A stretch of 64,000 bases of DNA from Mustelus asterias (taxonomy: Eukaryota), in the NCBI RefSeq assembly GCF_964213995.1, contig NC_135808.1, positions 34,720,001 to 34,784,000 on the forward strand. Reading direction: 5' to 3'. Each line of letters begins with the position of its first letter. Position 1 is the first letter of the stretch. Shown here one piece after another: positions 3,828-63,240 of the stretch. The notes beneath the pieces are model-generated. The model made no database searches. It saw only the letters and a program-made list of their open reading frames with translations, and was not told where the DNA came from. Made by a program: the position numbers and the translations under genes.

Positions 3828-4489
3828 GTAAAGCTAATTTTTCTCCAGTACGATGATGTCAATCATTCTCAATGTGGTTCTGGATGGCAAAGTCTTATTA
3901 ACAAGTGAACAGATATTCTGCAGGGATGTGCGAACTGACTCAATGGCAGAGACAGTGGTGGGCGAGGTAGGCAGGGTAAGAGGAACCTGGCGAGAATAAT
4001 CCCCAGCAGCTAGGCAGGCAGGAGGAGCCCTGTGAAAACATGGGCTGGGGCAGTTAGGCAATGTACAATATACATCAGTGACTATTTACAACATCAAGCA
4101 ACTTGACGCGACCCTGAAAATGGGCTTTAACTGCAGTAGCTGGTTTGCAAATACATCCCCTCCCCCAAACACCCACCAATGCTGTTCTGATTTCAAATCC
4201 TCTTTCTCTGGTATGGGGAAGTGAAAATGAGATAAAATAGGAACTTCGGCCCAACATATGAGACTGTTCCAAATAATATCACATTCATGTCCAAATAGGA
4301 ATGTGTTTATTCTTGTCTGTATGAGAGAGAGTAACAGATTCACTGTCAGAAAGGGAACTAACTATAAACCAGCAGTTTCCATTTGGAAATGACACCATCC
4401 CACCTGTAACCAGTATCTGACTCATCACTGTCCCAGCTAACCAATGGGATCATTCCAATGTCAATTAGTTATCCATTGCTAAAAGCCTT

Positions 4490-6040
4490 TGATTTTGATT
4501 TGATTTGATTTATTATTGTCACATGTATTAACATACAGTGAAAAATATTGTTTCGTGCGCGCTATACTGTTCATAGAGAAGGAAAAGAGAGAGTGCAGAA
4601 TGCAGTGTTACAGTCATAGCTAGGGTGTAGAGAAAGATCAACTTAATGCAAGGTAAGTCCGTTCAAAAGTCTGACAGCAGCAGGGAAGAAGCTGTTCTGG
4701 AGTCGGTTGGTACGTGACCTCAGACTTGTATCTTTCTCCTGAAGGAAGAAGGTGGAAGAGAGAATGTCCAGAGTGCATGGGGTCCTTAATTATGCTGTTT
4801 TGCCAAGGCAGCGGGAAGTGTAGACAGAGTCAATGAATGGGAGGCTGGTTTGCGTGATGAATTGGGCTACATTCACTGACCTTTTGTAATTTCTTGTGGT
4901 CTTGGGCAGAGCAGGAGCCATACCAAGCTGTGATACAAGCAGAAAGAATGCTTTCTCTGGTGCATCTGTAAAAGTTGGTGAGAGTCGGAGCTGACATGCC
5001 AAATTTCCTTTGTCTTCTGAGAAAGTAGAGGCGTTGGTGGGCTTTCTTAACAATAGCATCAGCATGGGGGGACCAGGACAGGTTGTTCGTGCTCTGGACA
5101 CCTAAAAACTCGAAGCTCTCGACCCTTTCTATTTTGTCCCCATTGATGTAGACAGGGGCATGTTCTCCTTTACGCTTCCTGAATTCAATGACAATCTCCT
5201 TCATTTTGTTGACATTGAGGGAGAGATTATTGTTGCTGCACCAGTTCACCAGATTCTCTACCTCATTCCTGTACTCTGTCTCATCATTGTTTGAGATCCG
5301 ACCCACTATGGTGGTGTCATCAGCAAACCTGAAAATCGAATTGGAGGGGAATTTGGCCGCACAGTCATAGGTGTATAAGGAGTATAGTAGGGAGCTGAGA
5401 ACACAGCTTGTGGGGCACCGGTGTTGAGGATGATCGTGGAGGAGGTGTTGTTGCCTATTCTTACTGATTGTGGTCTGTGAGTTAAGAGGTTCAGGATCCA
5501 GTCGCAGAGGGAGGTGCCGAGGCCCAGGCCATGGAGTTTGGAGATGAGTTTCGTGGAAATAATAGTGTTGAAGGCTGAGCTGTAGTCAATAAATAGGAGT
5601 CTGACATAGGTGTCCTTGTTATCTAGGTGCTCCAGGGTTGAGCGCAGGCCCAGGGAAATGGCGTCTGCTGTGGACCTGTTGCAGCAGTAGGCAAACTGTA
5701 GTGGATCAGGGTAGTCCGGGAGGCTGGAATTGATTCGTGCCATGACTAACCTTTCGAAGCACTTCATAATGATGGATGCCAGAGCCACGGGCCGATAGTC
5801 ATTAAGGCACGCTGCTTGGTTTTTCTTAGGTACCGGGATGATGGTCATCTTGTTGAAGCAGATAGGGACCTCAGATTGTTGTAAAGAGAGGTTGAAGATG
5901 TCTGTGAATACCTCCGCCAGCTGATCCGCGCAGGATCTGAGTGCTTGTCCGGGTACCCCGTCCGGGTACCCCATCCGGGCCAGTTGCTTTCCGTGGGTTG
6001 ACCTTCAAGAAAGTTGCTCTGACATCTGCAGTGGTGACCC
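4490..6040 (-). mobile_element. Rex1/Babar-clade LINE fragment (RT and C-terminus, degenerate)
   Basis: [34 protein letters not shown] and LYFLRR..KFGM..TNFYRCT.ESIL motifs; (TCAAA)n tail near 4490-4510. Confidence 0.85.
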
Positions 6041-11939: not shown

Positions 11940-13950
11940 GCTCCCTTGATGCCAATGGAAGTCACCCTCAACTCTAGTATTCAGCTCTTTTGTCCATGTT
12001 TGAACCAAGGTTGTAATGAGGTCAGGAGCTGAGTGACCCTGGCAGAATCTAAACTGAGCGTCTGTGAGCAGGTTATTGCTGAGTAAGTGCTGTTTGATAG
12101 CATTGTTGATGGCCCTTCCATCCCTTTACTGATAATCAAGAATAGACTGATGGGGCAGTAATTGGCCTGGCTGGATTTGTTTCTTGTGTCCAGGACATAG
12201 CTGAGGAATGTTCCACATTTCCTGTTAGATGCCAGTGTTGTAGCTGTACTGGAACAGCGTGGCTAGGGGCGCGGCACGTTCTGGAGCACAAGTCTTCAGT
12301 ACAATTGCTGGAATATTGTCAGGGCCAACAGCCTTTGAATTATCCCGTGCCTTCAGTCGTTTCTTGATATCACGTGGAGTGAATCGAATTGACTGGAGGC
12401 TGGCATCTGAGATGCTGGGGACCTCTGGAGGAGGCCGAGATGGATCATCCACTTGGCACTTCTGGCTGAAGATTGTGGCGAAAGCTTCAGCCTTATCTTT
12501 TGCACTGATGTGCTGGGCTCCTCCATCATTGAGGATGGGATATTTGTAGAGCCTCCTCCTCCAGTGAGTTGTTTAACTGTCCACCACCATTCACAACTGG
12601 ATGTGGAAGGACTGCAGAGCTTGGATCTGATCCATTGGTTGTGGAATCTTTTAGCTCTATCACTTGCTGCTTATGCTGTTTGGCACATGAATAGTCCTGT
12701 GTTGTAGCTTCACCCAGGTTGACACTTCATTTTTAGATTTCCCTGGTGCTGTTCCTGGCATGCCCTCTTGCACTCTCCATTGAACCAGGGTTGATCTCCT
12801 GATGGTAATGGTTGAGTGGGGGATATGCCATGAGGTTACAGATTATGGTTGAGTACAATTCTGCTGCTGCTGATGGCCCAAAGCGCCCAGTGTTGAGCTG
12901 CTAGATCTGTTTGAAGTCTGTCCCATTTAGCACGGTGATAGTGCCACACAACACGATTGAGGGTATCCTCAATGTCAAGATGGGACTTCGTCTCCACAGC
13001 GACTGTGCGGTGGTCACTCTTACCGATACTGTCATGGGCAGATGCATCTGTGACAGGCAGGTTGATGAGGATGAGGTCAAGTATGTTTTTCCTTCTTGTT
13101 GTTTCCCTCACCACCTGCCCCAGCCTCTGTCTAGCAGCTATGTCCTTTCGGACCCAACCAGCTCAGTCTGTGGTGGTACTATCAAGCCACCCAGAGTACA
13201 TTCTGCACCCTTGCCACCCTCAGTGCTTCCTCCAAGTGGTGTTAAAGATGGAGGAATACTGATTCATCAGTCGAAGGAAGGCAGTACGTAGTAATCAGCC
13301 GGGGGTTTCCTTGCTCATGTTTGACCTGGGGCCATGAGACTTCATGAGGTCCGGAGTCAATGTTGAAGACTCCCAGGGTAACTCCATCCCGACTGTATCT
13401 CACTATACTGCCACCTCTGCTGGGTTTGTCCTGACGGTGGGACAGGACATATCCAGGGATGGTAATGGCAGTGTCTGGGACATTATCTGTCAGGTATGAT
13501 TCAGTGAATGTGACTATGTCAGGCTGTTGCTTCACTAGAATGTGACATATCTCTCCCAAGCCTCCAGATGTTAGTAAGGACGACTTTGCAGGGTCGACAG
13601 GACTGAGTTTGCCATAGTTTAGTCCAGTACCTAGTACCGGGTGGTCCGTCCAGTTTCATTTCTGTTCGGCTTCATAATGCTTTGATACAACTGAGTGGCG
13701 TGCTGGGCCACTTCAGAATCAACCACATTGTTGTGGATCTAGAGTCACATGTAGGCCAGATCAGGTTAGCATGGCAGATTTCCTTCCCCAAAGGGACATT
13801 ATTGAACCAGATGGACTTTTACAACAATCAGCAATGGTTTCACAGTCATTATCAGATTTTTTAATTCACGATTTTTTGCTGAATTAAAATTTCAAAACCC
13901 AGGTCCCTAGAGAATTGCTCTGTCTCTGAATTACTAGTCCAGTGACAATA
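11940..13950 (-). mobile_element. Degenerate CR1/L2-group LINE (endonuclease + start of RT)
   Basis: QQPDIV..TESYL, NILDLIL.N, GKSDHRTV and KAVGPDNIP motifs in ORFs 13242-13559, 12836-13114 and 12225-12452. Confidence 0.8.
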
Positions 13951-14413
13951 TTAGTGGCAGAGTGGCACAGTGGCTAGCACTGCTACCTCCCTCCAGGGAA
14001 CTCGGTTCAATTCCAGCCTTGGGCGACTGTCTTTTTGGAGTTTGTATGTTCTCCTTGTGTCTGCATGGGTTTCCTCTGGTGCTCTGGTTTTCTCCCACAG
14101 TCCAAAGATGTGCAGGTTAGTTGCATTGGCCATGCTAAATTGTCCCTTAGTGTCCAAGAATGTGGAGATTAGATGGGATCAGCCATAGTAAATGTGTGGG
14201 ATTATAGGGATAGGGTGAGGAAGAGGGCTGGGTAAAATACTCTGTTAGAGAGTTGGTGCTAATTGAGCACACTCAAAATGAGTGCCATGTTCGAGTCTTT
14301 ACGTCGCTCGTCGACGTGATTGTCTACCTCTAGCGAATCCACAGTCAGGGGACTACTGATCTAAACTGAGGCCAGATTATAAGGTCAAATCAGGGGTACT
14401 ACCCTCCCAAGAT

Positions 14414-15091
14414 CTAATTGGGGCTACTGAGCCAAGTTGTTGGCACCCAGTGCACGAAACTCCACCACCTCAGGACTGATAGAATAGGCCGAATCAAGAC
14501 TGAAAAATTAAAGAGACTATTAACTATACTAAAAGCCCCAAGTGTGGGAAAAATGGTATTACAGGGCTTACAAAATAACGTGTCTATGGGATAGTGTATT
14601 ATTACCTCACTACCCTTAGTTCGGTCCTGAGTTGGCTCTATGCTAACAGTCTCGATGAAGGTACCAGAAGTACCAACATCGCTTACGGTATTTTTGCTTA
14701 TTTCTAAGCTTCCCGAACCCACATTCTGGGCTTTATAGGCCTTATTATAGAAGGTAACTGTAGTTAACTCAACTACGTCATCCGTTGGATGGGCCGTCCA
14801 AACGGGCTCCTCTACAATAGGTTCAAGGTCCTCAACTACTGGGGTAGCTACCTTACCTGGACTGGGACCAGAATATACCACCCAATAGTGCCGATAGTTT
14901 AACTCGGGTCTCAAGGCTGTCTCTTCTGTTTGAGTGGAGACGGAACTTGTCTCTAGCTTCTTAGGGCTAGTTCTAGTATAGCCTAACTTTTTGAATTTTT
15001 CCCAAAGAGCGGCTACAGACTCATCTGGGGGGCTGTTATTTAACCGGGACCCAACCCATCCGGATTCCCCCTTTTCGGGAGTACTATTCAT
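14414..15091 (-). pseudogene. Truncated N-terminus of an R2-like ORF
   Basis: 225-aa ORF directly after the ribozyme; IIHYPIDTLFCKPCNTIFPTLGAFS is the CxxC half of a C2H2 finger with no His pair, consistent with a deletion junction near 14525. Confidence 0.65.
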
Positions 15092-15168
15092 TTCGCTAAC
15101 CGCCTATATCAAATCGCACAAATCTCTCTGTGGACTATCTATCTACGGTCTCTGCGTTGTTTTTAACA

Positions 15169-15331
15169 AAGTTGTTTAGCCCTTGGTGGCAAGCCACCAA
15201 GGTTACCGACGGGGCCGCGAGGAGGCACAACTTCACTGTGAATGCCAAAACACGCCAATAACATTCACAGAGGTAACTACCCAGAGATGACTCTCTAGTG
15301 AGACCCTTCTAAGAGTCATAGTTACTCCCGC
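15169..15331 (-). ncRNA. HDV-like self-cleaving ribozyme (R2 5' ribozyme)
   Basis: P1 (G)GCGGG/CCCGUC, P2 AAGUUGU/ACAACUU, P3 GCC/GGC, L3 UCCUCGC, P1.1 CC/GG, P4 CCUUGGUGG-CUUG-CCACCAAGG, J4/2 GCUAA with the candidate catalytic C at 15179. Confidence 0.9.
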
Positions 15332-15891
15332 ATGGGCTGAATGGCTTCTTCTGCACTGTTGGGATTCTGTGAATGCCACTGCATCTCCTGTTACAGGGAG
15401 AAGGCAGGAGACTGGCAGATGAGTTGCTCATTCGATAAGTAGTGCAGACATGATGGGCTGAATGGGCTCCTTCTATGCTGTAACAGTGCAGAGTGTCCTT
15501 CACTACACTAAGATCTGATAACATTATTGGGTCAAACAGCGTAGGCTCTGATTTTCTGCATTAATTGTCTTTTCCTGGCTGAAACCAGACTGGGTGCACT
15601 AAAATGGAAATTTCCCTCAGATGACTGTACGGCAGGAAGTAAAACGGTCGACATGATGCAAAGACTGACCCCATTTCCAGCCAGGAAGGGATTGTTTTAT
15701 GTCCAGGTCTGTTTCCCCTTGTGAAGATGCTCTGAGTGTTGATCTGTGATGGGACAGCCCTGTATCTGGGGTTAGTGTCCATATATCTCAAACTGTTTTA
15801 CTGGGGTGTTTCACCACAGCTAAGCTCAGGTCACCAACTCACCCGGGAGATGCAAAGGGGCTGAGTTATTTAGAAGCGTTGTGATAAAATG

Positions 15892-16206: not shown

Positions 16207-16256
16207 GGAGGTTATTCTGAATTTATAAAAGACGATATATCATACTTCAGCTGTTA

Positions 16257-19200
16257 CATAAGAACATAAGAAATAGGAGCAGAAGTAGGCCATCTAGCCC
16301 CTCGAGCCTGCCCCGCCATTCAATAAGATCATGGCTGATCTGACGTGGATCAGTACCACTTACCCGCCTGATCCCCATAACCCTTAATTCCCTTACTGAT
16401 CAGGAATCCATCCATCCGCGCTTTAAACATATTCAGCGAGGTAGCCTCCACCACCTCAGTGGGCAGAGAATTCCAGAGATTCACCACCCTCTGGGAGAAG
16501 AAGTTCCTCCTCAACTCTGTCTTAAACCGACCCCCCTTTATTTTGAGGCTGTGTCCTCTAGTTTTAACTTCCTTACTAAGTGGAAAGAATCTCTCCGCCT
16601 CCACCCTATCCAGCCCCCGCATTATCTTATAAGTCTCCATAAGATCCCCCCTCATCCTTCTAAACTCCAACGAGTACAAACCCAATCTCCTCAGCCTCTC
16701 CTCATAATCCAAACCCCTCATCTCCGGTATCAACCTGGTGAACCTTCTCTGCACTCCCTCCAATGCCAATATATCCTTCCTCATATAAGGGGACCAATAC
16801 TGCACACAGTATTCCAGTTGCGGCCTCACCAATGCCCTGTACAGGTGCATCAAGACATCCCTGCTTTTATATTCTATCCCCCTCGCAATATAGGCCAACA
16901 TCCCATTTGCCTTCTTGATCACCTGTTGTACCTGCAGACTGGGCTTTTGCGTCTCATGCACAAGGACCCCCAGGTCCCTTTGCACGGTAGCATGTTTTAA
17001 TTTGTTTCCATTGAGATAGTAATCCCATTTGTTATTATTTCCTCCAAAGTGTATAACCTCGCATTTCTCAACGTTATACTCCATTTGCCATATCCTCGCC
17101 CACTCACTCAGCCTGTCCAAATCTCTCTGCAGATCTTCTCCGTCCTCCACACGATTCACTTTTCCACTTAACTTTGTGTCGTCTGCAAACTTCGTTACCC
17201 TACACTCTGTCCCCTCCTCCAGATCATCTATATAAATGGTAAATAGTTGCGGCCCGAGTACCGATCCCTGCGGCATGCCACTAGTTACCTTCCTCCAACC
17301 GGAAAAACACCCATTTATTCCGACTCTTTGCTTCCTGTCGGATAGCCAGTCCCCAATCCACTTTAACACACTACCCCCAACTCCGTGTGCCCTAATCTTC
17401 TTCAGCAGCCTTTTATGGGGCACCTTATCAAAAGCCTTTTGGAAATCCAAAAACACCGCATCCACCGGTTCTCCTCCATCAACCGCCCTAGTCACATCTT
17501 CATAAAAATCCAACATGTTCGTCAAGCACGACTTTCCCCTCATGAATCCATGCTGCGTCTGATTGATCGAACCATTTCTATCCAGATGCCCTGCTATCTC
17601 CTCTTTAATAATGGATTCCAGCATTTTCCCTACTACAGACGTTAAGCTGACCGGCCTATAGTTACCCGCCTTTTGTCTCCATCCTTTTTTAAACAGCGGC
17701 GTAACATTAGCCGTTTTCCAATCAACCGGCACTACCCCAGAATGCAACGAGTTTTGATAAATAATCACTAACGCATCCACTATTACCTCTGACATTTCTT
17801 TCAATACCCTGGGATGCATTCCATCCGGACCCGGGGACTTGTCCACCTTCAGTCCCATTAGTCTACCCAGCACTGCCTCTCTGGTAACATTAATTGTATT
17901 AAGTATTTCTCCTGCTGCCAACCCTCTATCGTTAATATTTGGCAAACTATTTGTGTCCTCCACCGTGAAGACCGACACAAAAAACTTATTTAAAGACTCA
18001 GCCATATCCTCATTTCCCACTATTAACTCCCCCCTCTCCTCCTCCAAGGGTCCAACATTCACTCTAGCCACTCTATTCCTTTTTATATATTTATAAAAAC
18101 TTTTACTATCATTTTTTATATTAATTGCTAGCCTAGCTTCATAGTCTATCCTTCCTTTCTTTATCGCTTTCTTAGTCTCTCTTTGTTGTTTCTTAAATTT
18201 TTCCCAATCACTTGTTTCTCCACTATTTTTGGCCACTCTGTACGCAGCTGTTTTTATTTTAATACTCTCCTTTATTTCCTTCGTTATCCACGGCTGGTTC
18301 TCCCTTTTCTTACAATCCTTGTTTTTTGCTGGAATATATTTTTGCTGAGAACTGAAAAGGATCTCCTTAAAAATCCTCCACTGTTCCTCAGCTATCCTAC
18401 CTGCCAGCCTGCTCTCCCAGTCTACCTTAGCCAATTCATCCCTCATCCTATCATATTTCCCTCTGTTCAAACAGAGGACACTGGTTTGGGACCAAACTTT
18501 CTCCTCTTCCATCTGAATCAGAAATTCGACCATATTGTGGTCACTAGACCCAAGAGGGTCCTTCACAATAAGATCCTTAATTCTACCTACCTCGTTACAC
18601 AATACCAGATCCAAAATAGCTCGTTCCCTCGTCGGTTCCGTAACATGCTGTTCAAGGAAACTATCCCGACAGCATTCTAAGAACTCTTCCTCCATTCCAC
18701 CCTTACCGACTTGAGTCTGCCAGTCAATGTGCATGTTGAAGTCCCCCATGATTATTGCCATTCCGTTTTTACACGCATCCCTTATCTGCTTGTTTATAGC
18801 CCTCCCTACCTCAACATTATTATTTGGGGGCCTATATACCACACCTACTAGTGTCTTTCTCCCTCTACTATTCCTCATCTCTACCCATAATGATTCCACG
18901 TTTTGTTCCTCAGAGCCTATGTCATCCCTCAGTACTACCCTGATATTATCTCTTATTAATAGCGCGACCCCACCACCTTTTCCTTCCTGTCTATTCTTCC
19001 TAAACGCCTGAAACCCCTGGATATTCATCTCCCAGTCCTGGTCACCTTTCAGCCACGTTTCTGTAATGGCCACTAGATCGTACCCACTTGTGCTGATTTG
19101 CACCATCAACTCATTTACCTTGTTCCGAATGCTTCGTGCATTCAGGCAAAGTGTCCTTATTCCAGCTTTTATCTGGACCCGCTTTGATGAGTCGCGAACA

Positions 19201-26159: not shown

Positions 26160-27870
26160 CCAATTTGATTCAAAAACTATAGATCAGTGAGCCTAATGTC
26201 AGTAGTAGGGAACTTGTGAGAGTCATTTGTCAAAGATTTCATAACGCAGCATTTGGAAAGCAGTGGTTATAATCAGGCAAAGTCAGCATGGATTTACAAA
26301 GGGGAAATCATGCTTGATGAATCTATTGGAATTCTTTGAAGATGTAACTAGTAGAGTTGATCAGGGAGATCCGGTAGATGTGGTTTATTTAGATTTTCAG
26401 AAGGCTTTCAACAAGGTCTCACATAGCAGATTACTATGTAAAGTTAAAGCAATGGGATTGCAGGTAGTGTCTTGAGGTGGATAGAAAGCTGGTTAGCAGA
26501 CAGGAGGCAAAGAGTTGGAATAAATGGGTCTTCATCCGATTGGCAGGCAGTGACTAATGGGGTACTGCAGTGATCTGTGCTAGGACTCCAACTGTTCACA
26601 TTATATATTAATGATTTGGCAGAGGGAACTAAATGTATTATCCTCAAATTTGCAGATGATACAAAGTTGGGTGGGAGGATGAGCTGTGAGGAGGATGAAG
26701 AGATGCTTCAGCGTGATTTGGACAGGCTGATTGAGTGGGCATCTGCATAGCAGACGCAGTATAATTTGGATCAATGTGAGGTTATGCACTTTGGTTGCAA
26801 AAATAGAAAGGCAGAATAATATTTGAATGGGTGTAAACAGAGAGAGGTGGATACTCAGCGAGACCTTGGTGTCCTCGTGCATCAATCACTGAAAATAAGC
26901 ATGCAGGTGCAACAGGCAGTAAAGAAGGCAAATGGTATGCTGGCCTTCATAGCGAGAGGATTTGAGTACAGGTATAGGGATGTTTTGCTCCAATTGTATG
27001 GGTGCTGGTGAGGCCACATCTGGAGTATTGTGTGCAGTTTTGGTGTCCTTATCTGAGGAAGGATGTCCTTGCTATAGAGGAAGTACAGCGAAGGTTTAGC
27101 AGGCTGATTCCTGGGGTGGCAGATCTGTCATATGGGGAGAGATTAGGGCAGCATGGCGGCACAGTGGTTAGCACTGCTGTCTCACAACCCGGGTTCAATT
27201 CCTGGCTTGGGTGACTGCACATTCTCCCCATGTCTGCATGAGTTTCCTCCAGCTGCTCCAGTTTCCTCCCACACTCCAAAGATGTGGAAGTTAGGTTGAT
27301 TGGCCATGCCAAATAGCCCCCTAATGTCAGGGAGACTAGCAGGGTAAATACATGGGGTTACAGGGATAGGATCTTGGTGGGATTGTTGTCAGAGCAGGCT
27401 TGATGCACTGCACTCATTCTGCATTGTAGGAATTCTGTGATTAAGTCGGTTAGGTTTATATTCATTGGAGTTTAGAAGAATGAGAGCGGATCTCATAGAA
27501 ATTTATAAATTTCTAACAGGATTAGACATGGTAGATTCAGTAAATATGTGCCCAATGGTGGGGGAGTCCAGAACTAAGGGTCACAGTTTGAGGATAACGG
27601 GTCAACGTATTAGAACTGAGGTGAAGAGAAATTTCTTCACCCAGGGAGTGGTGAATCTGTGGAATTCACTACCACAGAAAGTAGTTGAGGCCAAAACATT
27701 GTGTGATTTCAAGAAGTTATTAGATAGAGTTCTTGGGACGAAAGGGATCAAGAGATATAGGGGGAAGGCAGGATCAGGGTATTGAATTTGATGATATTAA
27801 ATTAAATGGTGGAGCAGGCTCGAAGGGCCAAATGGCCTCCTCCTGCATCTATTTTCTATGCATGTTTATA
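26160..27870 (+). mobile_element. Degenerate CR1 RT with an HE1 SINE inserted at ~27146-27440
   Basis: QHGFTKGKSCL, LDFQKAF and PHLEYCVQFW pieces; SINE head GGGCAGCATGGCGGCACAGTGGTTAGCAC. Confidence 0.85.
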
Positions 27871-60740: not shown

Positions 60741-63240
60741 CATAAGAACATAAGAACATAAGAAATAGGAGCAGGAGTAGGCCATCTAGCCCCTCGAGCC
60801 TGCCCCGCCATTCAATAAGATCATGGCTGATCTGACGTGGATCAGTACCACTTACCCGCCTGATCCCCATAACCCTTAATTCCCTTACCGATCAGGAATC
60901 CATCCATCCGCGCTTTAAACATATTCAGCGAGGTAGCCTCCACCACCTCAGTGGGCAGAGAATTCCAGAGATTCACCACCCTCTGGGAGAAGAAGTTCCT
61001 CCTCAACTCTGTCTTAAACCGACCCCCCTTTATTTTGAGGCTGTGTCCTCTAGTTTTAACTTCCTTACTAAGTGGAAAGAATCTCTCCGCCTCCACCCTA
61101 TCCAGCCCCCGCATTATCTTATAAGTCTCCATAAGATCCCCCCTCATCCTTCTAAACTCCAACGAGTACAAACCCAATCTCCTCAGCCTCTCCTCATAAT
61201 CCAAACCCCTCATCTCCGGTATCAACCTGGTGAACCTTCTCTGCACTCCCTCCAATGCCAATATATCCTTCCTCATATAAGGGGACCAATACTGCACACA
61301 GTATTCCAGCTGCGGCCTCACCAATGCCCTGTACAGGTGCATCAAGACATCCCTGCTTTTATATTCTATCCCCCTCGCAATATAGGCCAACATCCCATTT
61401 GCCTTCTTGATCACCTGTTGTACCTGCAGACTGGGCTTTTGCGTCTCATGCACAAGGACCCCCAGGTCCCTTTGCACGGTAGCATGTTTTAATTTGTTTC
61501 CATTGAGATAGTAATCCCATTTGTTATTATTTCCTCCAAAGTGTATAACCTCGCATTTATCAACGTTATACTCCATTTGCCATATCCTCGCCCACTCACT
61601 CAGCCTGTCCAAATCTCTCTGCAGATCTTCTCCGTCCTCCACACGATTCACTTTTCCACTTATCTTTGTGTCGTCTGCAAACTTCGTTACCCTACACTCC
61701 GTCCCCTCCTCCAGATCATCTATATAAATGGTAAACAGTTGCGGCCCGAGTACCGATCCCTGTGGCACGCCACTAGTTACCTTCCTCCAACCGGAAAAAC
61801 ACCCATTTATTCCGACTCTTTGCTTCCTGTCGGATAGCCAGTCCCCAATCCACTTTAACACACTACCCCCAACTCCGTGTGCCCTAATCTTCTTCAGCAG
61901 CCTTTTATGGGGCACCTTATCAAACGCCTTTTGGAAATCCAAAAACACCGCATCCACCGGTTCTCCTCCATCAACCGCCCTAGTCACATCTTCATAAAAA
62001 TCCAACATGTTCGTCAAGCACGACTTTCCCCTCATGAATCCATGCTGCGTCTGATTGATCGAACCATTTCTATCCAGATGCCCTGCTATCTCCTCTTTAT
62101 TAATGGATTCCAGCATTTTCCCTACTACAGACGTTAAGCTGACCGGCCTATAGTTACCCGCCTTTTGTCTCCTTCCTTTTTTAAACAGCGGCGTAACATT
62201 AGCCGTTTTCCAATCAACCGGCACTACCCCAGAATGCAACGAGTTTTGATAAATAATCACTAACGCATCCACTATTACCTCTGACATTTCTTTCAATACC
62301 CTGGGATGCATTCCATCCGGACCCGGGGACTTGTCCACCTTCAGTCCCATTAGTCTACCCAGCACTGCCTCTCTGGTAACATTAATCGTATTAAGTATTT
62401 CTCCTGCTGCCAACCCTCTATCGTTAATATTTGGCATACTATTTGCGTCCTCCACCGTGAAGACCGACACAAAAAACTTATTTAAAGACTCAGCCATATC
62501 CTCATTTCCCACTATTAACTCCCCCCTCTCGTCCTCCAAGGGTCCAACATTCACTCTAGCCACTCTATTCCTTTTTATATATTTATAAAAACTTTTACTA
62601 TCATTTTTTATATTAATTGCTAGCCTAGCTTCATAGTCTATCCTTCCTTTCTTTATCGCTTTCTTAGTCTCTCTTTGTTGTTTCTTAAATTTTTCCCAAT
62701 CACTTGTTTCTCCACTATTTTTGGCCACTCTGTCCGCAGCTGTTTTTATTTTAATACTCTCCTTTATTTCCTTCGTTATCCACGGCTGGTTCTCCCTTTT
62801 CTTACAATCCTTGTTTTTTGCTGGAATATATTTTTGCTGAGAACTGAAAAGGATCTCCTTAAAAATCCTCCACTGTTCCTCAGCTATCCTACCTGCCAGC
62901 CTGCTCTCCCAGTCTACCTTAGCCAATTCATCCCTCATCCTATCATATTTCCCTCTGTTCAAACAGAGGACACTGGTTTGAGACCAAACTTTCTCCTCTT
63001 CCATCTGAATCAGAAATTCGACCATATTGTGGTCACTAGACCCAAGAGGGTCCTTCACAATAAGATCCTTAATTCTACCTACCTCGTTACACAATACCAG
63101 ATCCAAAATAGCTCGTTCCCTCGTCGATTCCGTAACATGCTGTTCAAGGAAACTATCCCGACAGCATTCTAAGAACTCTTCCTCCATTCCACCCTTACCG
63201 ACTTGAGTCTGCCAGTCAATGTGCATGTTGCATGTTGAAG
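60741..63240 (-). mobile_element. Young CR1, 5'-truncated, near-identical to the 16257-19418 copy
   Basis: Translated ORF2 differs from the 986-aa copy at only about a dozen residues by eye; same 3' UTR and tail. Confidence 0.97.

What the first reader, a model, noticed from the sequence alone, without database searches (positions are those of the whole stretch)
14260..15331. Ribozyme-capped, internally deleted R2 derivative inserted outside rDNA (candidate non-autonomous R2 family in a shark)
Seen: a 1072-bp minus-strand insert splits an HE1 SINE with no TSD and an apparent loss of a few SINE bases. Its order is 28S-derived leader, HDV-like ribozyme, 5' UTR, ORF N-terminus ending in half a zinc finger, then a ~260-nt tail with hairpins (ACGTCG/CGACGT and GCACTCA/TGAGTGT). 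It has no RT or endonuclease. Known: R2 normally inserts site-specifically in 28S rDNA, is co-transcribed with rRNA and is freed by a 5' HDV-like ribozyme; short internally deleted R2 elements (SIDEs) are described in Drosophila rDNA. Inference: this copy keeps the two cis-elements needed for trans-mobilisation (5' ribozyme, 3' UTR) and was integrated off-target, so it may belong to an undescribed vertebrate SIDE-like family.
Basis: partly seen in the sequence, partly recalled or inferred. Interest (0 to 1): 0.92.

Follow-up and report, generated by a model that had tools for sequence, protein, structure and literature searches.

The report
Internally deleted R2 copy outside rDNA
This is a young, dead, shortened copy of the ribosomal-DNA-specific R2 jumping gene that landed in an ordinary shark SINE instead of the 28S gene; it is a clear example of a known kind of event, and it is not shown to belong to a new mobile family.

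Summary
Window 14260-15331 (minus strand) is a 1072-nt insert that splits a SINE, with 7 SINE bases lost and no target-site duplication.

In order it carries:
- a 27-nt 28S leader starting at position -27 of the R2 site
- a complete HDV-like ribozyme whose P1 stem uses those 28S bases
- a 73-nt 5' UTR
- the first 187-188 codons of an R2 protein, 61% identical to a 1296-aa shark-type R2 protein (E 8e-72), cut inside the first CCHH zinc finger
- 20 unmatched bases
- a 247-nt non-coding tail

Contigs from related organisms hold both halves at about 99% and 93% identity and at similar multi-copy depth. In these contigs the two halves are not adjacent: the matches stop at 14527 and at 14506, and the contigs run on unlike the window. 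The R2 origin, the RNA intermediate and the off-target site are therefore well supported.

The SIDE-like family is not shown. No second copy lies in the window, no contig of the deep organism-A run crosses the junction, and no protein hit spans it. The only pointers to a family are unchecked scan notes of other short 28S-headed R2 inserts in this genome.

Internally deleted and non-rDNA R2 copies are already in print. I could not fetch the parent's 3' UTR.

The parts
15305..15331 (-). 28S-derived leader, corresponding to positions -27 to -1 of the R2 insertion site. It carries one CT unit less than 28S and an extra GA.
   Evidence: Read. Compared by eye with the 28S target oligo printed in PMC12180492 and with the 28S strings in PMC3774820. 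The relatives' contigs restore the CT unit (table 4, at 15311).
15165..15331 (-). HDV-like self-cleaving ribozyme. P1 is 15331-15327 with 15213-15209; the G at -28 that would pair with C15208 is missing. J1/2 is about 89 nt. P2 is 15237-15228 with 15174-15165. P3 is 15226-15224 with 15216-15214. L3 is 15223-15217. P1.1 is 15222-15221 with 15207-15206. P4 is 15202-15193 with 15190-15181. J4/2 is 15180-15175, with the candidate catalytic C at 15179.
   Evidence: P2, P3 and P4 appear in the MFE fold. The core motif occurs once against 0.05 expected. P1 and P1.1 were read by eye. The architecture and the -28 rule come from passages of PMC3774820. There is no Rfam match.
15092..15164 (-). Remainder of the 5' UTR, between the ribozyme and the start codon.
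   Evidence: The start codon aligns with residue 1 of P0007 and P0001.
14527..15091 (-). R2 ORF N-terminus, residues 1-188, free of stops and frameshifts. It ends after CxxC-x8-GAF, inside the first CCHH zinc finger.
   Evidence: BLASTP to P0007: 115/189 identical, E 8e-72. tblastn. Alignment A1. P0007 matches solved R2 proteins: 9dou at 3.5e-218, and 9nl2 over residues 164-1294. The relatives' contigs match down to 14527 and then run on (records 11, 23, 32).
14507..14526 (-). 20-nt AT-rich filler at the deletion junction. No laid contig of the deep organism-A run X2 matches it.
   Evidence: the X2 depth in bin 14476-14522 (233.4) equals record 10's 353.9 x 31/47, so nothing else in X2 covers 14507-14522. 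X1 and X7 have depth 0 there. X6 has 4.63, which is undecided. No 9-mer source lies nearby in the window.
14260..14506 (-). Non-coding tail, presumed to be the parental R2 3' UTR. Its last 58 nt can be drawn as hairpin 14317-14301, a loop-to-14295-14292 pairing of 4 bp, a 6-nt spacer 14291-14286, and hairpin 14285-14269. The last two bases, T and A (14261-14260), together with the flank's G and C (14259-14258), spell the first four 28S bases downstream of the R2 site.
   Evidence: No protein match to P0007. Contigs of organisms A and B cover it at depth similar to the 5' half (X2: 354 against 206-275; X6: 16.8 against 21.9), and record 10 runs on unlike the window beyond 14506. Folds. A-clade 3' UTR features from passages of PMC12180492.
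13956..14259 (+). Left (5') part of the host SINE that the insert interrupts.
   Evidence: and the loose-end consensus.
15332..15375 (+). Right (3') part of the same SINE. Seven consensus bases between the two halves are missing.
   Evidence: and the loose end before 15332 (264 contigs of X2).

Best explanation
This is a young, dead copy of an A-lineage-type shark R2 retrotransposon, made through an RNA intermediate and integrated off-target into a SINE.

Shown:
- The ORF start is R2.
- The 5' end carries a 28S leader that begins one base inside the -28 self-cleavage site. That site is defined by a P1 stem built from 28S bases.
- About 3.3 kb of the element is missing: the rest of the zinc fingers, Myb, RT and endonuclease.
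- Related genomes hold both halves as parts of longer, multi-copy sequences.

Inferred:
- The template was an R2/28S co-transcript trimmed by its own ribozyme.
- R2 protein bound the 3' UTR (the tail) and primed reverse transcription at a nick or break in the SINE, helped by the few 28S bases that follow the 3' UTR in the transcript. TA-GC sits at the 3' junction.
- The enzyme copied to the very 5' end of the RNA.
- The internal deletion, with its 20 filler bases, arose by a template switch during that reverse transcription or already lay in the template RNA.
- Joining cost 7 target bases and left no duplication.

The copy cannot move by itself. Nothing here shows that it has been copied again.
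For: - ORF: residues 1-187 are 61% identical to the N-terminus of the 1296-aa protein P0007, E 8e-72. P0007 matches solved R2 proteins at E 3.5e-218. A second homologue, P0003, carries RVT_1 and matches R2Tg at 3.3e-107.
- Ribozyme helices.
- The -28 site: it is the commonest R2 cleavage site and its P1 is built from 28S -28..-22 (PMC3774820 passages). The insert starts at -27.
- Parent sequences in relatives: high-depth contigs of organism A are about 99% identical (12 other letters over records 10, 11, 13 and 15, which span about 1,000 nt). An organism B contig is 93% identical over 801 nt. All stop matching at 14527 or 14506 and run on.
- Youth: CpG o/e is 0.65 in the insert, against 0.12 and 0.26 in the flanks and 0.33 in the window. 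The ORF part is intact.
- Integration: 7-bp target loss and no duplication. This fits R2's near-blunt double nick, with the second nick 2 bp upstream (PMC12180492 passage).
- Template tail: R2 templates carry 4-5 nt of downstream rRNA that pair with the primer.
- Location: no rRNA in the window.
Against: - The parent's 3' UTR could not be fetched, so the tail's identity rests on depth parity and on contigs that run on. The tool itself warns that its depths are not copy numbers.
- Rfam finds no ribozyme.
- Fold energies of the ribozyme core, the tail and its last 61 nt are within chance (z -1.35, -0.51 and -1.10).
- No read or contig was seen to span any of the three junctions of this copy, so the assembly is not independently confirmed.
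- The relatives' contigs stop matching at 15327, four bases short of the insert's 5' end. I cannot explain this.
- Seven scan notes of other 28S-headed or short R2 inserts in this genome suggest this may not be a one-off.
Confidence: 0.6

Rival explanations
1. One reading: this is a member of a SIDE-like non-autonomous family. An internally deleted master, keeping the ribozyme and the 3' UTR, is transcribed, trimmed and copied in trans by R2 protein. This is one of several copies sharing the same deletion.
For: - Both ends needed for trans-mobilisation are kept, and the 5' end is complete.
- The scan's unchecked notes list other short R2-type inserts outside rDNA in the same genome, of 1037 and 1201 letters, plus four to five stand-alone 28S-headed ribozymes. 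Similar sizes would be unexpected for independent deletions.
- The budgerigar internally deleted R2 copy keeps similar parts: about 0.7 kb of the 5' end plus about 0.33 kb of the 3' end (PMC5035012 passage).
Against: - One copy in the window.
- In X2 (2.4 billion letters of contigs, organism A) nothing covers 14507-14522, and both halves continue into other sequence.
- No protein in 5.8 billion clusters spans the junction; the only hit, P0001, covers the N-terminus alone (1 hit of 159 candidates).
- The scan notes were not checked and their sequences could not be read. Searches of them by sequence and by relatives were blank.
Confidence: 0.3
2. A full-length R2 inserted off-target, and a later DNA-level deletion (end joining with filler) removed about 3.3 kb.
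For: The 20-nt unmatched filler at the junction is typical of end joining. Non-rDNA R2 copies in Drosophila are 'frequently incomplete' (PMC2718515 passage).
Against: The copy is young (CpG retained, ORF part intact, about 1% from relatives' copies), which leaves little time for a second event. Nothing distinguishes this from a template switch.
Confidence: 0.12
3. R2 cDNA or RNA was captured during repair of a chance double-strand break in the SINE, without R2 endonuclease choosing the site.
For: No duplication, a 7-bp loss, only 2 bases of microhomology at the 3' junction, and no convincing likeness of the site to the 28S target.
Against: The copy is complete at both ends of the RNA, which fits orderly target-primed synthesis better than capture of fragments. 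It cannot be excluded with these data.
Confidence: 0.1
4. Assembly chimera joining rDNA/R2 reads to a SINE.
For: No contig spanning the junctions was seen. rDNA and R2 are hard to assemble (PMC13188248 passage).
Against: A chimera would not start at the ribozyme cleavage site, end at an element terminus, and sit between two abutting halves of one SINE with only 7 bases lost.
Confidence: 0.03

Closest known systems
Drosophila R2 SIDEs (Short Internally Deleted Elements; Eickbush & Eickbush 2012, PMC3414825; abstract and section 5 read)
   Same: A 5' R2 ribozyme joined to an R2 3' end, with the coding middle missing and a stretch of unrelated sequence in between (197 bp there, 20 nt here).
   Different: SIDEs sit in the 28S R2 site and exist as many copies (about 70 reads, under 3% divergence) with TPRT-type 5' junction variation. 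They keep no ORF part. Here there is one copy, outside rDNA, retaining 188 codons, and no shared-junction copies have been found.
Budgerigar R2-2_MUn, an internally deleted R2 copy (Kojima et al. 2016, PMC5035012; passage read)
   Same: A vertebrate R2 copy that keeps about 0.7 kb of the 5' end and about 0.33 kb of the 3' end. Its 5' end is flanked by 28S-like sequence.
   Different: It is a bird R2 and its context is not described as a SINE. I saw only the passage, not the sequence or the supplement.
Non-rDNA R2 copies in Drosophila (Stage & Eickbush 2009, PMC2718515; passages read)
   Same: R2 copies not inserted in 28S, frequently incomplete and 1-2% diverged from the rDNA copies. In the same paper, non-28S R1 insertions carry 7-28 bp of upstream 28S at their 5' ends.
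   Different: Insects. No ribozyme-defined 28S leader is described for those R2 copies in the passages I read.
A-clade vertebrate R2 (zebra finch R2Tg, turtle PlaMe; PMC12180492) and shark R2s (PMC13188248)
   Same: The nearest full-length homologue, P0007, aligns to these solved proteins from the first zinc finger to the C-terminus. Cleavage at -28 is reported for zebra finch. The 3' UTR size is comparable (210-248 nt there, 247 nt here). The last 58 nt here can be drawn as pseudoknot, 6-nt spacer and stem.
   Different: The spacer sequence differs from the GAAAAG hinge. The second pseudoknot stem is only 4 bp and has no covariation support. The shark protein has an N-terminal extension of about 165 residues before the fingers.
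R2NS families without target specificity (PMC5035012; passage read)
   Same: R2-clade elements found outside 28S.
   Different: Those are autonomous families with many copies more than 98% identical to their consensus. This copy carries a 28S leader, which points to an rDNA-resident source.

Membership tests
R2 retrotransposon (as a derivative) | ORF homologous to R2 protein | tested here: met
   Residues 1-187 are 61% identical to P0007, E 8e-72. P0007 matches R2Tg (9dou) at 3.5e-218.
R2 retrotransposon (as a derivative) | Reverse transcriptase and restriction-like endonuclease domains present | tested here: not met
   tblastn with P0007 hits only 15091-14531 within the insert. Pfam finds nothing in the 225-aa ORF.
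R2 retrotransposon (as a derivative) | Inserted at the specific 28S rDNA site | tested here: not met
   The flanks are two halves of a SINE. No rRNA family matches in the 64-kb window.
R2 retrotransposon (as a derivative) | 3' UTR homologous to that of a full-length R2 of the same lineage | tested here: inconclusive
Indirect support only: relatives' contigs at similar depth that run on beyond 14506.
HDV-like self-cleaving ribozyme (R2 type) | Nested double pseudoknot (P1, P1.1, P2, P3, P4) with the conserved L3/P3 core | tested here: met
   P2, P3 and P4 appear in the MFE fold. P1 (5 bp present, plus 1 with the missing G at -28) and P1.1 were read. The core occurs once in the window against 0.05 expected. 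It differs by one base from the conserved R2 string quoted in PMC5035012.
HDV-like self-cleaving ribozyme (R2 type) | Match to a curated covariance model | tested here: not met
   0 Rfam matches at gathering score and at E<=10. The roughly 89-nt J1/2 insertion is a likely reason; this is an inference.
HDV-like self-cleaving ribozyme (R2 type) | Self-cleavage activity at the base of P1 | not testable with these tools
   Needs an in vitro transcription-cleavage assay with upstream 28S sequence.
SIDE (non-autonomous internally deleted R2) | 5' ribozyme conjoined with the 3' end, with the coding region missing | tested here: met
   The anatomy is as listed under parts. The 3' end identity is inferred, not aligned.
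SIDE (non-autonomous internally deleted R2) | Several copies sharing the same internal deletion, with junction variation typical of TPRT | tested here: not met
   One copy in the window. The junction and filler are not covered in run X2 and have depth 0 in X1 and X7; X6 is undecided. No junction-spanning protein was found. The source genome itself could not be searched, and the scan notes are unchecked.
SIDE (non-autonomous internally deleted R2) | Resides in the R2 site of 28S genes | tested here: not met
   Inserted in a SINE.

The most novel reading that the evidence does not exclude
This shark carries a propagating SIDE-like R2 derivative of about 1.0-1.2 kb: 28S leader, ribozyme, N-terminal ORF stub and 3' UTR. 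R2 protein mobilises it in trans, and it has escaped the rDNA to insert genome-wide. This would be a vertebrate R2-driven non-autonomous family with relaxed target choice.
Probability: 0.25. Interest if true: 0.7.

Novelty: new member of a known kind. Interest (0 to 1): 0.42.

Why it matters
The copy is a natural record of three steps of R2 biology in a cartilaginous fish:
- Its 5' end shows that the transcript was cut at the 28S -28 site predicted by the ribozyme fold.
- Its 3' junction fits priming by the few rRNA bases that follow the 3' UTR.
- Its location shows that an R2 template can be integrated away from rDNA in the germ line.

Vertebrate A-clade R2 proteins are being developed for site-specific transgene insertion, so natural off-target events and their junctions are of practical interest. 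If the other 28S-headed inserts noted in this genome share the deletion, it would be the first R2-dependent non-autonomous family in a vertebrate that I could find in the papers searched. As a single copy it is an ordinary dead element.

Tried and rejected
- Rfam, on the whole window at gathering score and on 14000-15600 at E<=10: no match. This gives no curated-model support for the ribozyme or for an R2 3' element.
A 24-letter exact pattern from the tail found nothing in metagenome contigs. The search for related loci with P0007 found 27 pattern matches, none confirmed.
- The search for homologous proteins with the 225-aa ORF gave 1 hit of 159 candidates: P0001, N-terminus only. With P0007 region 1-188 it gave 0 hits of 111 candidates. 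So neither a junction-spanning relative nor a closer full-length parent was found.
- Thermodynamic support for the tail and hairpins is within chance.
- I looked for a source of the 20-nt filler in the window and found only scattered 9-mers.
- Target-site mimicry of 28S is rejected as unsupported. Apart from the TAGC at the 3' junction, of which only G and C belong to the flank, the downstream flank shows only a loose likeness by eye to the 28S string.
- An L1/L2-type processed-pseudogene origin is rejected: there is no poly(A), no microsatellite tail and no duplication.
- A hybrid with another abundant LINE's 3' end is rejected: the tail has no second copy in the window, and its contig depth is like that of the R2 5' half, not like the SINE's.
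- The search of earlier findings by sequence and by relatives was blank.
- Supplements of PMC13188248 and PMC5035012, which hold the shark and bird R2 sequences and junction figures, were not open to me. They may contain the parent element or similar deleted copies.
Full report
**What is there**

On the minus strand, 15331->14260 is a 1072-nt block found once in the window. blastn of the block against the window returns only itself, and the next hits are 27 nt or shorter at E 0.016 or worse.

Both flanks belong to one SINE. The left flank (about 13956-14259) matches three other copies in the window at 71.5-78.5% identity. In a decayed paralog the two flank halves abut at 27403-27406. The consensus of 264 contig ends of run X2 lying just before 15332 reads ...GGTGC AGACTCG ATGGGC (table 7). 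The window has GGTGC ending at 14259 and ATGGGC starting at 15332. So seven SINE bases are gone and nothing is duplicated. I could not test the name HE1; ARAGORN finds no tRNA in 13800-15800. No rRNA or any other Rfam family reaches its gathering score anywhere in the 64 kb, so the locus is not rDNA.

**The 5' end**

The first 27 bases (15331-15305) correspond to 28S positions -27 to -1 of the R2 site, as printed in the target oligo of PMC12180492 (methods passage) and in the 28S strings of PMC3774820. There are two departures: one CT unit fewer and an inserted GA before the final AGG. The multi-copy contigs of organisms A and B have the CT unit, put in behind 15311 (X2 depth 284.9 of 405.3; X6 depth 21.9 of 24.2, table 4). 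The loss of that unit is therefore private to this copy, while the GA is shared.

Downstream lies an HDV-like ribozyme:
- P3 (GCC/GGC) around the loop UCCUCGC
- a P1 3' strand CCCGUC directly after P3
- GG for P1.1
- a 10-bp P4
- GCUAAA as J4/2
- a P2 of 6 Watson-Crick pairs plus up to 4 more

The MFE fold of 15245-15160 recovers P2, P3 and P4 on its own. Its energy is only z -1.35 against shuffles. The core string CCTCCTCGYGG occurs once, against 0.05 expected. PMC5035012 quotes CCUCCUCGUGG as the most conserved string of R2 ribozymes (passage).

The P1 partner of CCCGUC is the 28S string GGCGGG at -28 to -23. The insert begins with its second base. PMC3774820 (passages) reports three relevant points. 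Cleavage at -28, with P1 built from 28S -28..-22, is the commonest arrangement in R2 and includes zebra finch. P1 is 6-7 bp. P1 and P1' may be 23 to over 700 nt apart; here the distance is about 110 nt.

The copy therefore starts within one base of the predicted self-cleavage site. This is the strongest single argument that its template was a ribozyme-trimmed RNA and not a piece of rDNA moved as DNA. Against it, Rfam reports no ribozyme even at E<=10 on 14000-15600. I attribute that to the long J1/2 insertion, which is an inference.

**The ORF**

ATG at 15091 opens a 225-codon frame. A search of 1.84 billion representative proteins found 6 hits at E<=0.001. One of these, P0001, shares its 90% cluster with a 1296-aa protein from a Logan assembly, P0007.

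Window residues 1-187 align to P0007 residues 1-188 with 115/189 identities, E 8e-72. P0007 matches the solved R2 proteins 9dou (R2Tg, 3.5e-218), 9nl3 and 9nl2 (residues 164-1294 on chain 3-1110), and Bombyx R2. P0003, another hit, carries RVT_1 (2.6e-25) and matches the same structures.

All homologues that reach that far continue after ...C-x2-C-x8-(G/S)(A/L/T)F with x-x-H-x4-H (alignment A1). The window frame is therefore cut inside the first CCHH finger, 3-4 residues before the first histidine. After that it reads 38 unrelated codons.

tblastn with P0007 finds nothing else in the insert. The RT-like hits elsewhere in the window are 19-26% identical and belong to other LINEs.

**The junction and the tail**

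I laid contigs of four public runs on 14100-15500 at 85% likeness: X1 and X2 of organism A, X6 of organism B, and X7 of organism C. All are Logan contigs, and the tool warns that its depths are not copy numbers.

In X2:
- A 502-nt contig (depth 275) matches 14828-15327 with 3 other letters and 2 gap letters.
- An 811-nt contig (depth 206) matches 14527-14745 with 3 other letters and has 592 further letters unlike the window.
- A 317-nt contig (depth 354) matches 14349-14506 with 4 other letters and has 159 further letters unlike the window.

In X6, a 998-nt contig (depth 21.9) matches 14527-15327 with 54 other letters and runs on at both ends. In X7, a 225-nt contig starts matching at 14527.

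The X2 depth in bin 14476-14522 is 233.4, which is exactly 353.9 x 31/47. So no other X2 contig covers 14507-14522. X1 and X7 have depth 0 there. X6 has 4.63, which I cannot resolve.

I conclude four things:
- Both halves exist in related genomes as parts of longer sequences, at similar multi-copy depth. Contigs that look single-copy in X2 have depth 13-35.
- In those genomes the two halves are not adjacent.
- The 20 bases at 14507-14526 are filler.
- The deletion junction of this copy is not present in the deep organism-A run.

The tail has no protein likeness to P0007. It has no poly(A) or microsatellite end and no second copy in the window. Its 247 nt compare with the 210-nt and 248-nt full R2 3' UTRs quoted in PMC12180492 (passage).

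That paper describes the last 65 nt or so of A-clade 3' UTRs as pseudoknot, 6-nt hinge and stem, followed by 4-5 rRNA bases that pair with the primer (passages). The last 58 nt here can be drawn the same way:
- hairpin 14317-14301
- its loop CGAG pairing with CUCG at 14295-14292
- a 6-nt spacer
- hairpin 14285-14269

The junction letters T, A | G, C equal the first four 28S bases after the R2 site. This is a resemblance, not a test. The second stem is only 4 bp, the spacer sequence differs from GAAAAG, and the energies are within chance: z -1.10 with 27 of 200 shuffles as good, and z -0.51 for the whole tail.

**Age**

The insert is about 1% different from organism A's high-depth contigs (12 other letters over roughly 1,000 nt). 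Its ORF part is free of stops. Its CpG o/e is 0.65, against 0.12 and 0.26 in the flanks and 0.33 in the window. It is young relative to the SINE.

At positions such as 14348, 14444, 14722, 14916 and 14918, every X2 contig differs from the window. No organism A run holds more than 0.59 of the sampled words. So this exact copy is not in those runs. They come either from a close relative or from individuals that lack it.

**How it most likely arose**

An R2 in 28S was co-transcribed and cut at -28 by its ribozyme. R2 protein bound the 3' UTR. Reverse transcription was primed at a nick or break in a SINE, with the rRNA-derived end of the RNA pairing over two bases. Synthesis reached the RNA's 5' end but skipped about 3.3 kb (P0007 has 1296 codons), either by a template switch or because the RNA was already deleted. 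Joining removed 7 bp.

R2's two nicks lie 2 bp apart (PMC12180492 passage). A small loss without duplication is therefore the expected signature, unlike the duplications left by most LINEs. These steps are inferred. What is shown is the anatomy, the homology and the state of the relatives' contigs.

**Family or one-off**

Against a family:
- one copy in the window
- no junction-bridging contig in X2
- no junction-spanning protein among 159 candidates

For a family, only leads. The scan's own unchecked notes list seven R2 items elsewhere in this genome. They include inserts of 1037 and 1201 letters called short or non-autonomous, a 4941-letter relic, and several stand-alone 28S-headed ribozymes, all within the 816 windows read so far. 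I could not read those sequences.

Two further observations show that R2 pieces outside the homogenised rDNA copies are common in sharks, though not that they share this deletion. Organism A holds diverged, low-depth pieces of both halves (records 9, 12 and 14 at 87-94% identity). Chiloscyllium punctatum has N-terminal R2 fragments annotated as hypothetical proteins on contigs of 280 kb, 290 kb and 5.8 Mb.

**What is known**

- R2 in Chondrichthyes is reported in PMC13188248 (passages) and in PMC5035012 (R2Sqj; passage).
- SIDEs are described in Drosophila (PMC3414825; abstract and section 5).
- Non-rDNA, incomplete R2 copies 1-2% diverged from the rDNA copies occur in five Drosophila species. 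Non-28S R1 copies carry 7-28 bp of upstream 28S (PMC2718515; passages).
- An internally deleted R2 copy in budgerigar keeps regions 4-517, 604-726 and 4370-4700 of its relative (PMC5035012; passage).
- My three searches for a vertebrate R2 SIDE family listed none. This is not proof that none is in print, and the supplements were closed.

**Verdict**

The object is a new member of a known kind: an internally deleted, off-target R2 copy. The family claim is open, and I put it at about 0.25-0.3.

Noticed in passing
window 15327-15331, against runs X2 and X6 (records 15 and 23): The relatives' multi-copy contigs stop matching at 15327, four bases short of the insert's 5' end. True 28S upstream sequence should match to 15331. 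The X2 contig simply ends there, and the X6 contig runs on unlike the window. One possibility is a duplicated or variant leader at the parents' 5' junctions; another is that contigs with more 28S were filtered out. Unexplained.
   Followed up: partly
window 14825 to 15266 (table 5): One X2 contig (depth 25.2, 44 letters on its shorter side) joins 14825 to 15266, skipping 440 nt that include the ribozyme core and the first 88 or so codons. It may be another deleted R2 fragment in organism A, or a contig artefact.
   Followed up: no
window 16256-18738 and 60748-63230: Two copies of a 2,483-nt repeat at 99.2% identity. They carry an RT-like frame only about 24.5% identical to R2 RT, so they belong to a young LINE of another family.
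   Followed up: partly
window 15442-15525: A second fragment of the same SINE 3' region lies about 70 nt beyond the interrupted SINE's end. The insert therefore sits in a small cluster of SINE pieces.
   Followed up: no
proteins P0002, P0005, P0006 (Chiloscyllium punctatum GCC20388.1, GCC24880.1, GCC20326.1): These N-terminal R2 fragments (146-289 aa) are annotated as hypothetical proteins on contigs of 280 kb, 5.8 Mb and 290 kb. R2 5' pieces outside pure rDNA arrays may therefore be common in sharks. Their DNA context could not be read.
   Followed up: no
P0007 residues 1-165 and window ORF residues 1-165: Shark R2 proteins carry a conserved N-terminal extension of about 165 residues before the first zinc finger. 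It has no Pfam match and lies outside the region aligned to the solved R2 proteins.
   Followed up: no
run X1: X1 is listed as holding 0.59 of the insert's words. When laid, it covers only 14392-14468 and the SINE flanks. Its R2-bearing contigs may have been dropped by the filter for human-like (28S) sequence, which would fit rDNA residence of the parent.
   Followed up: no
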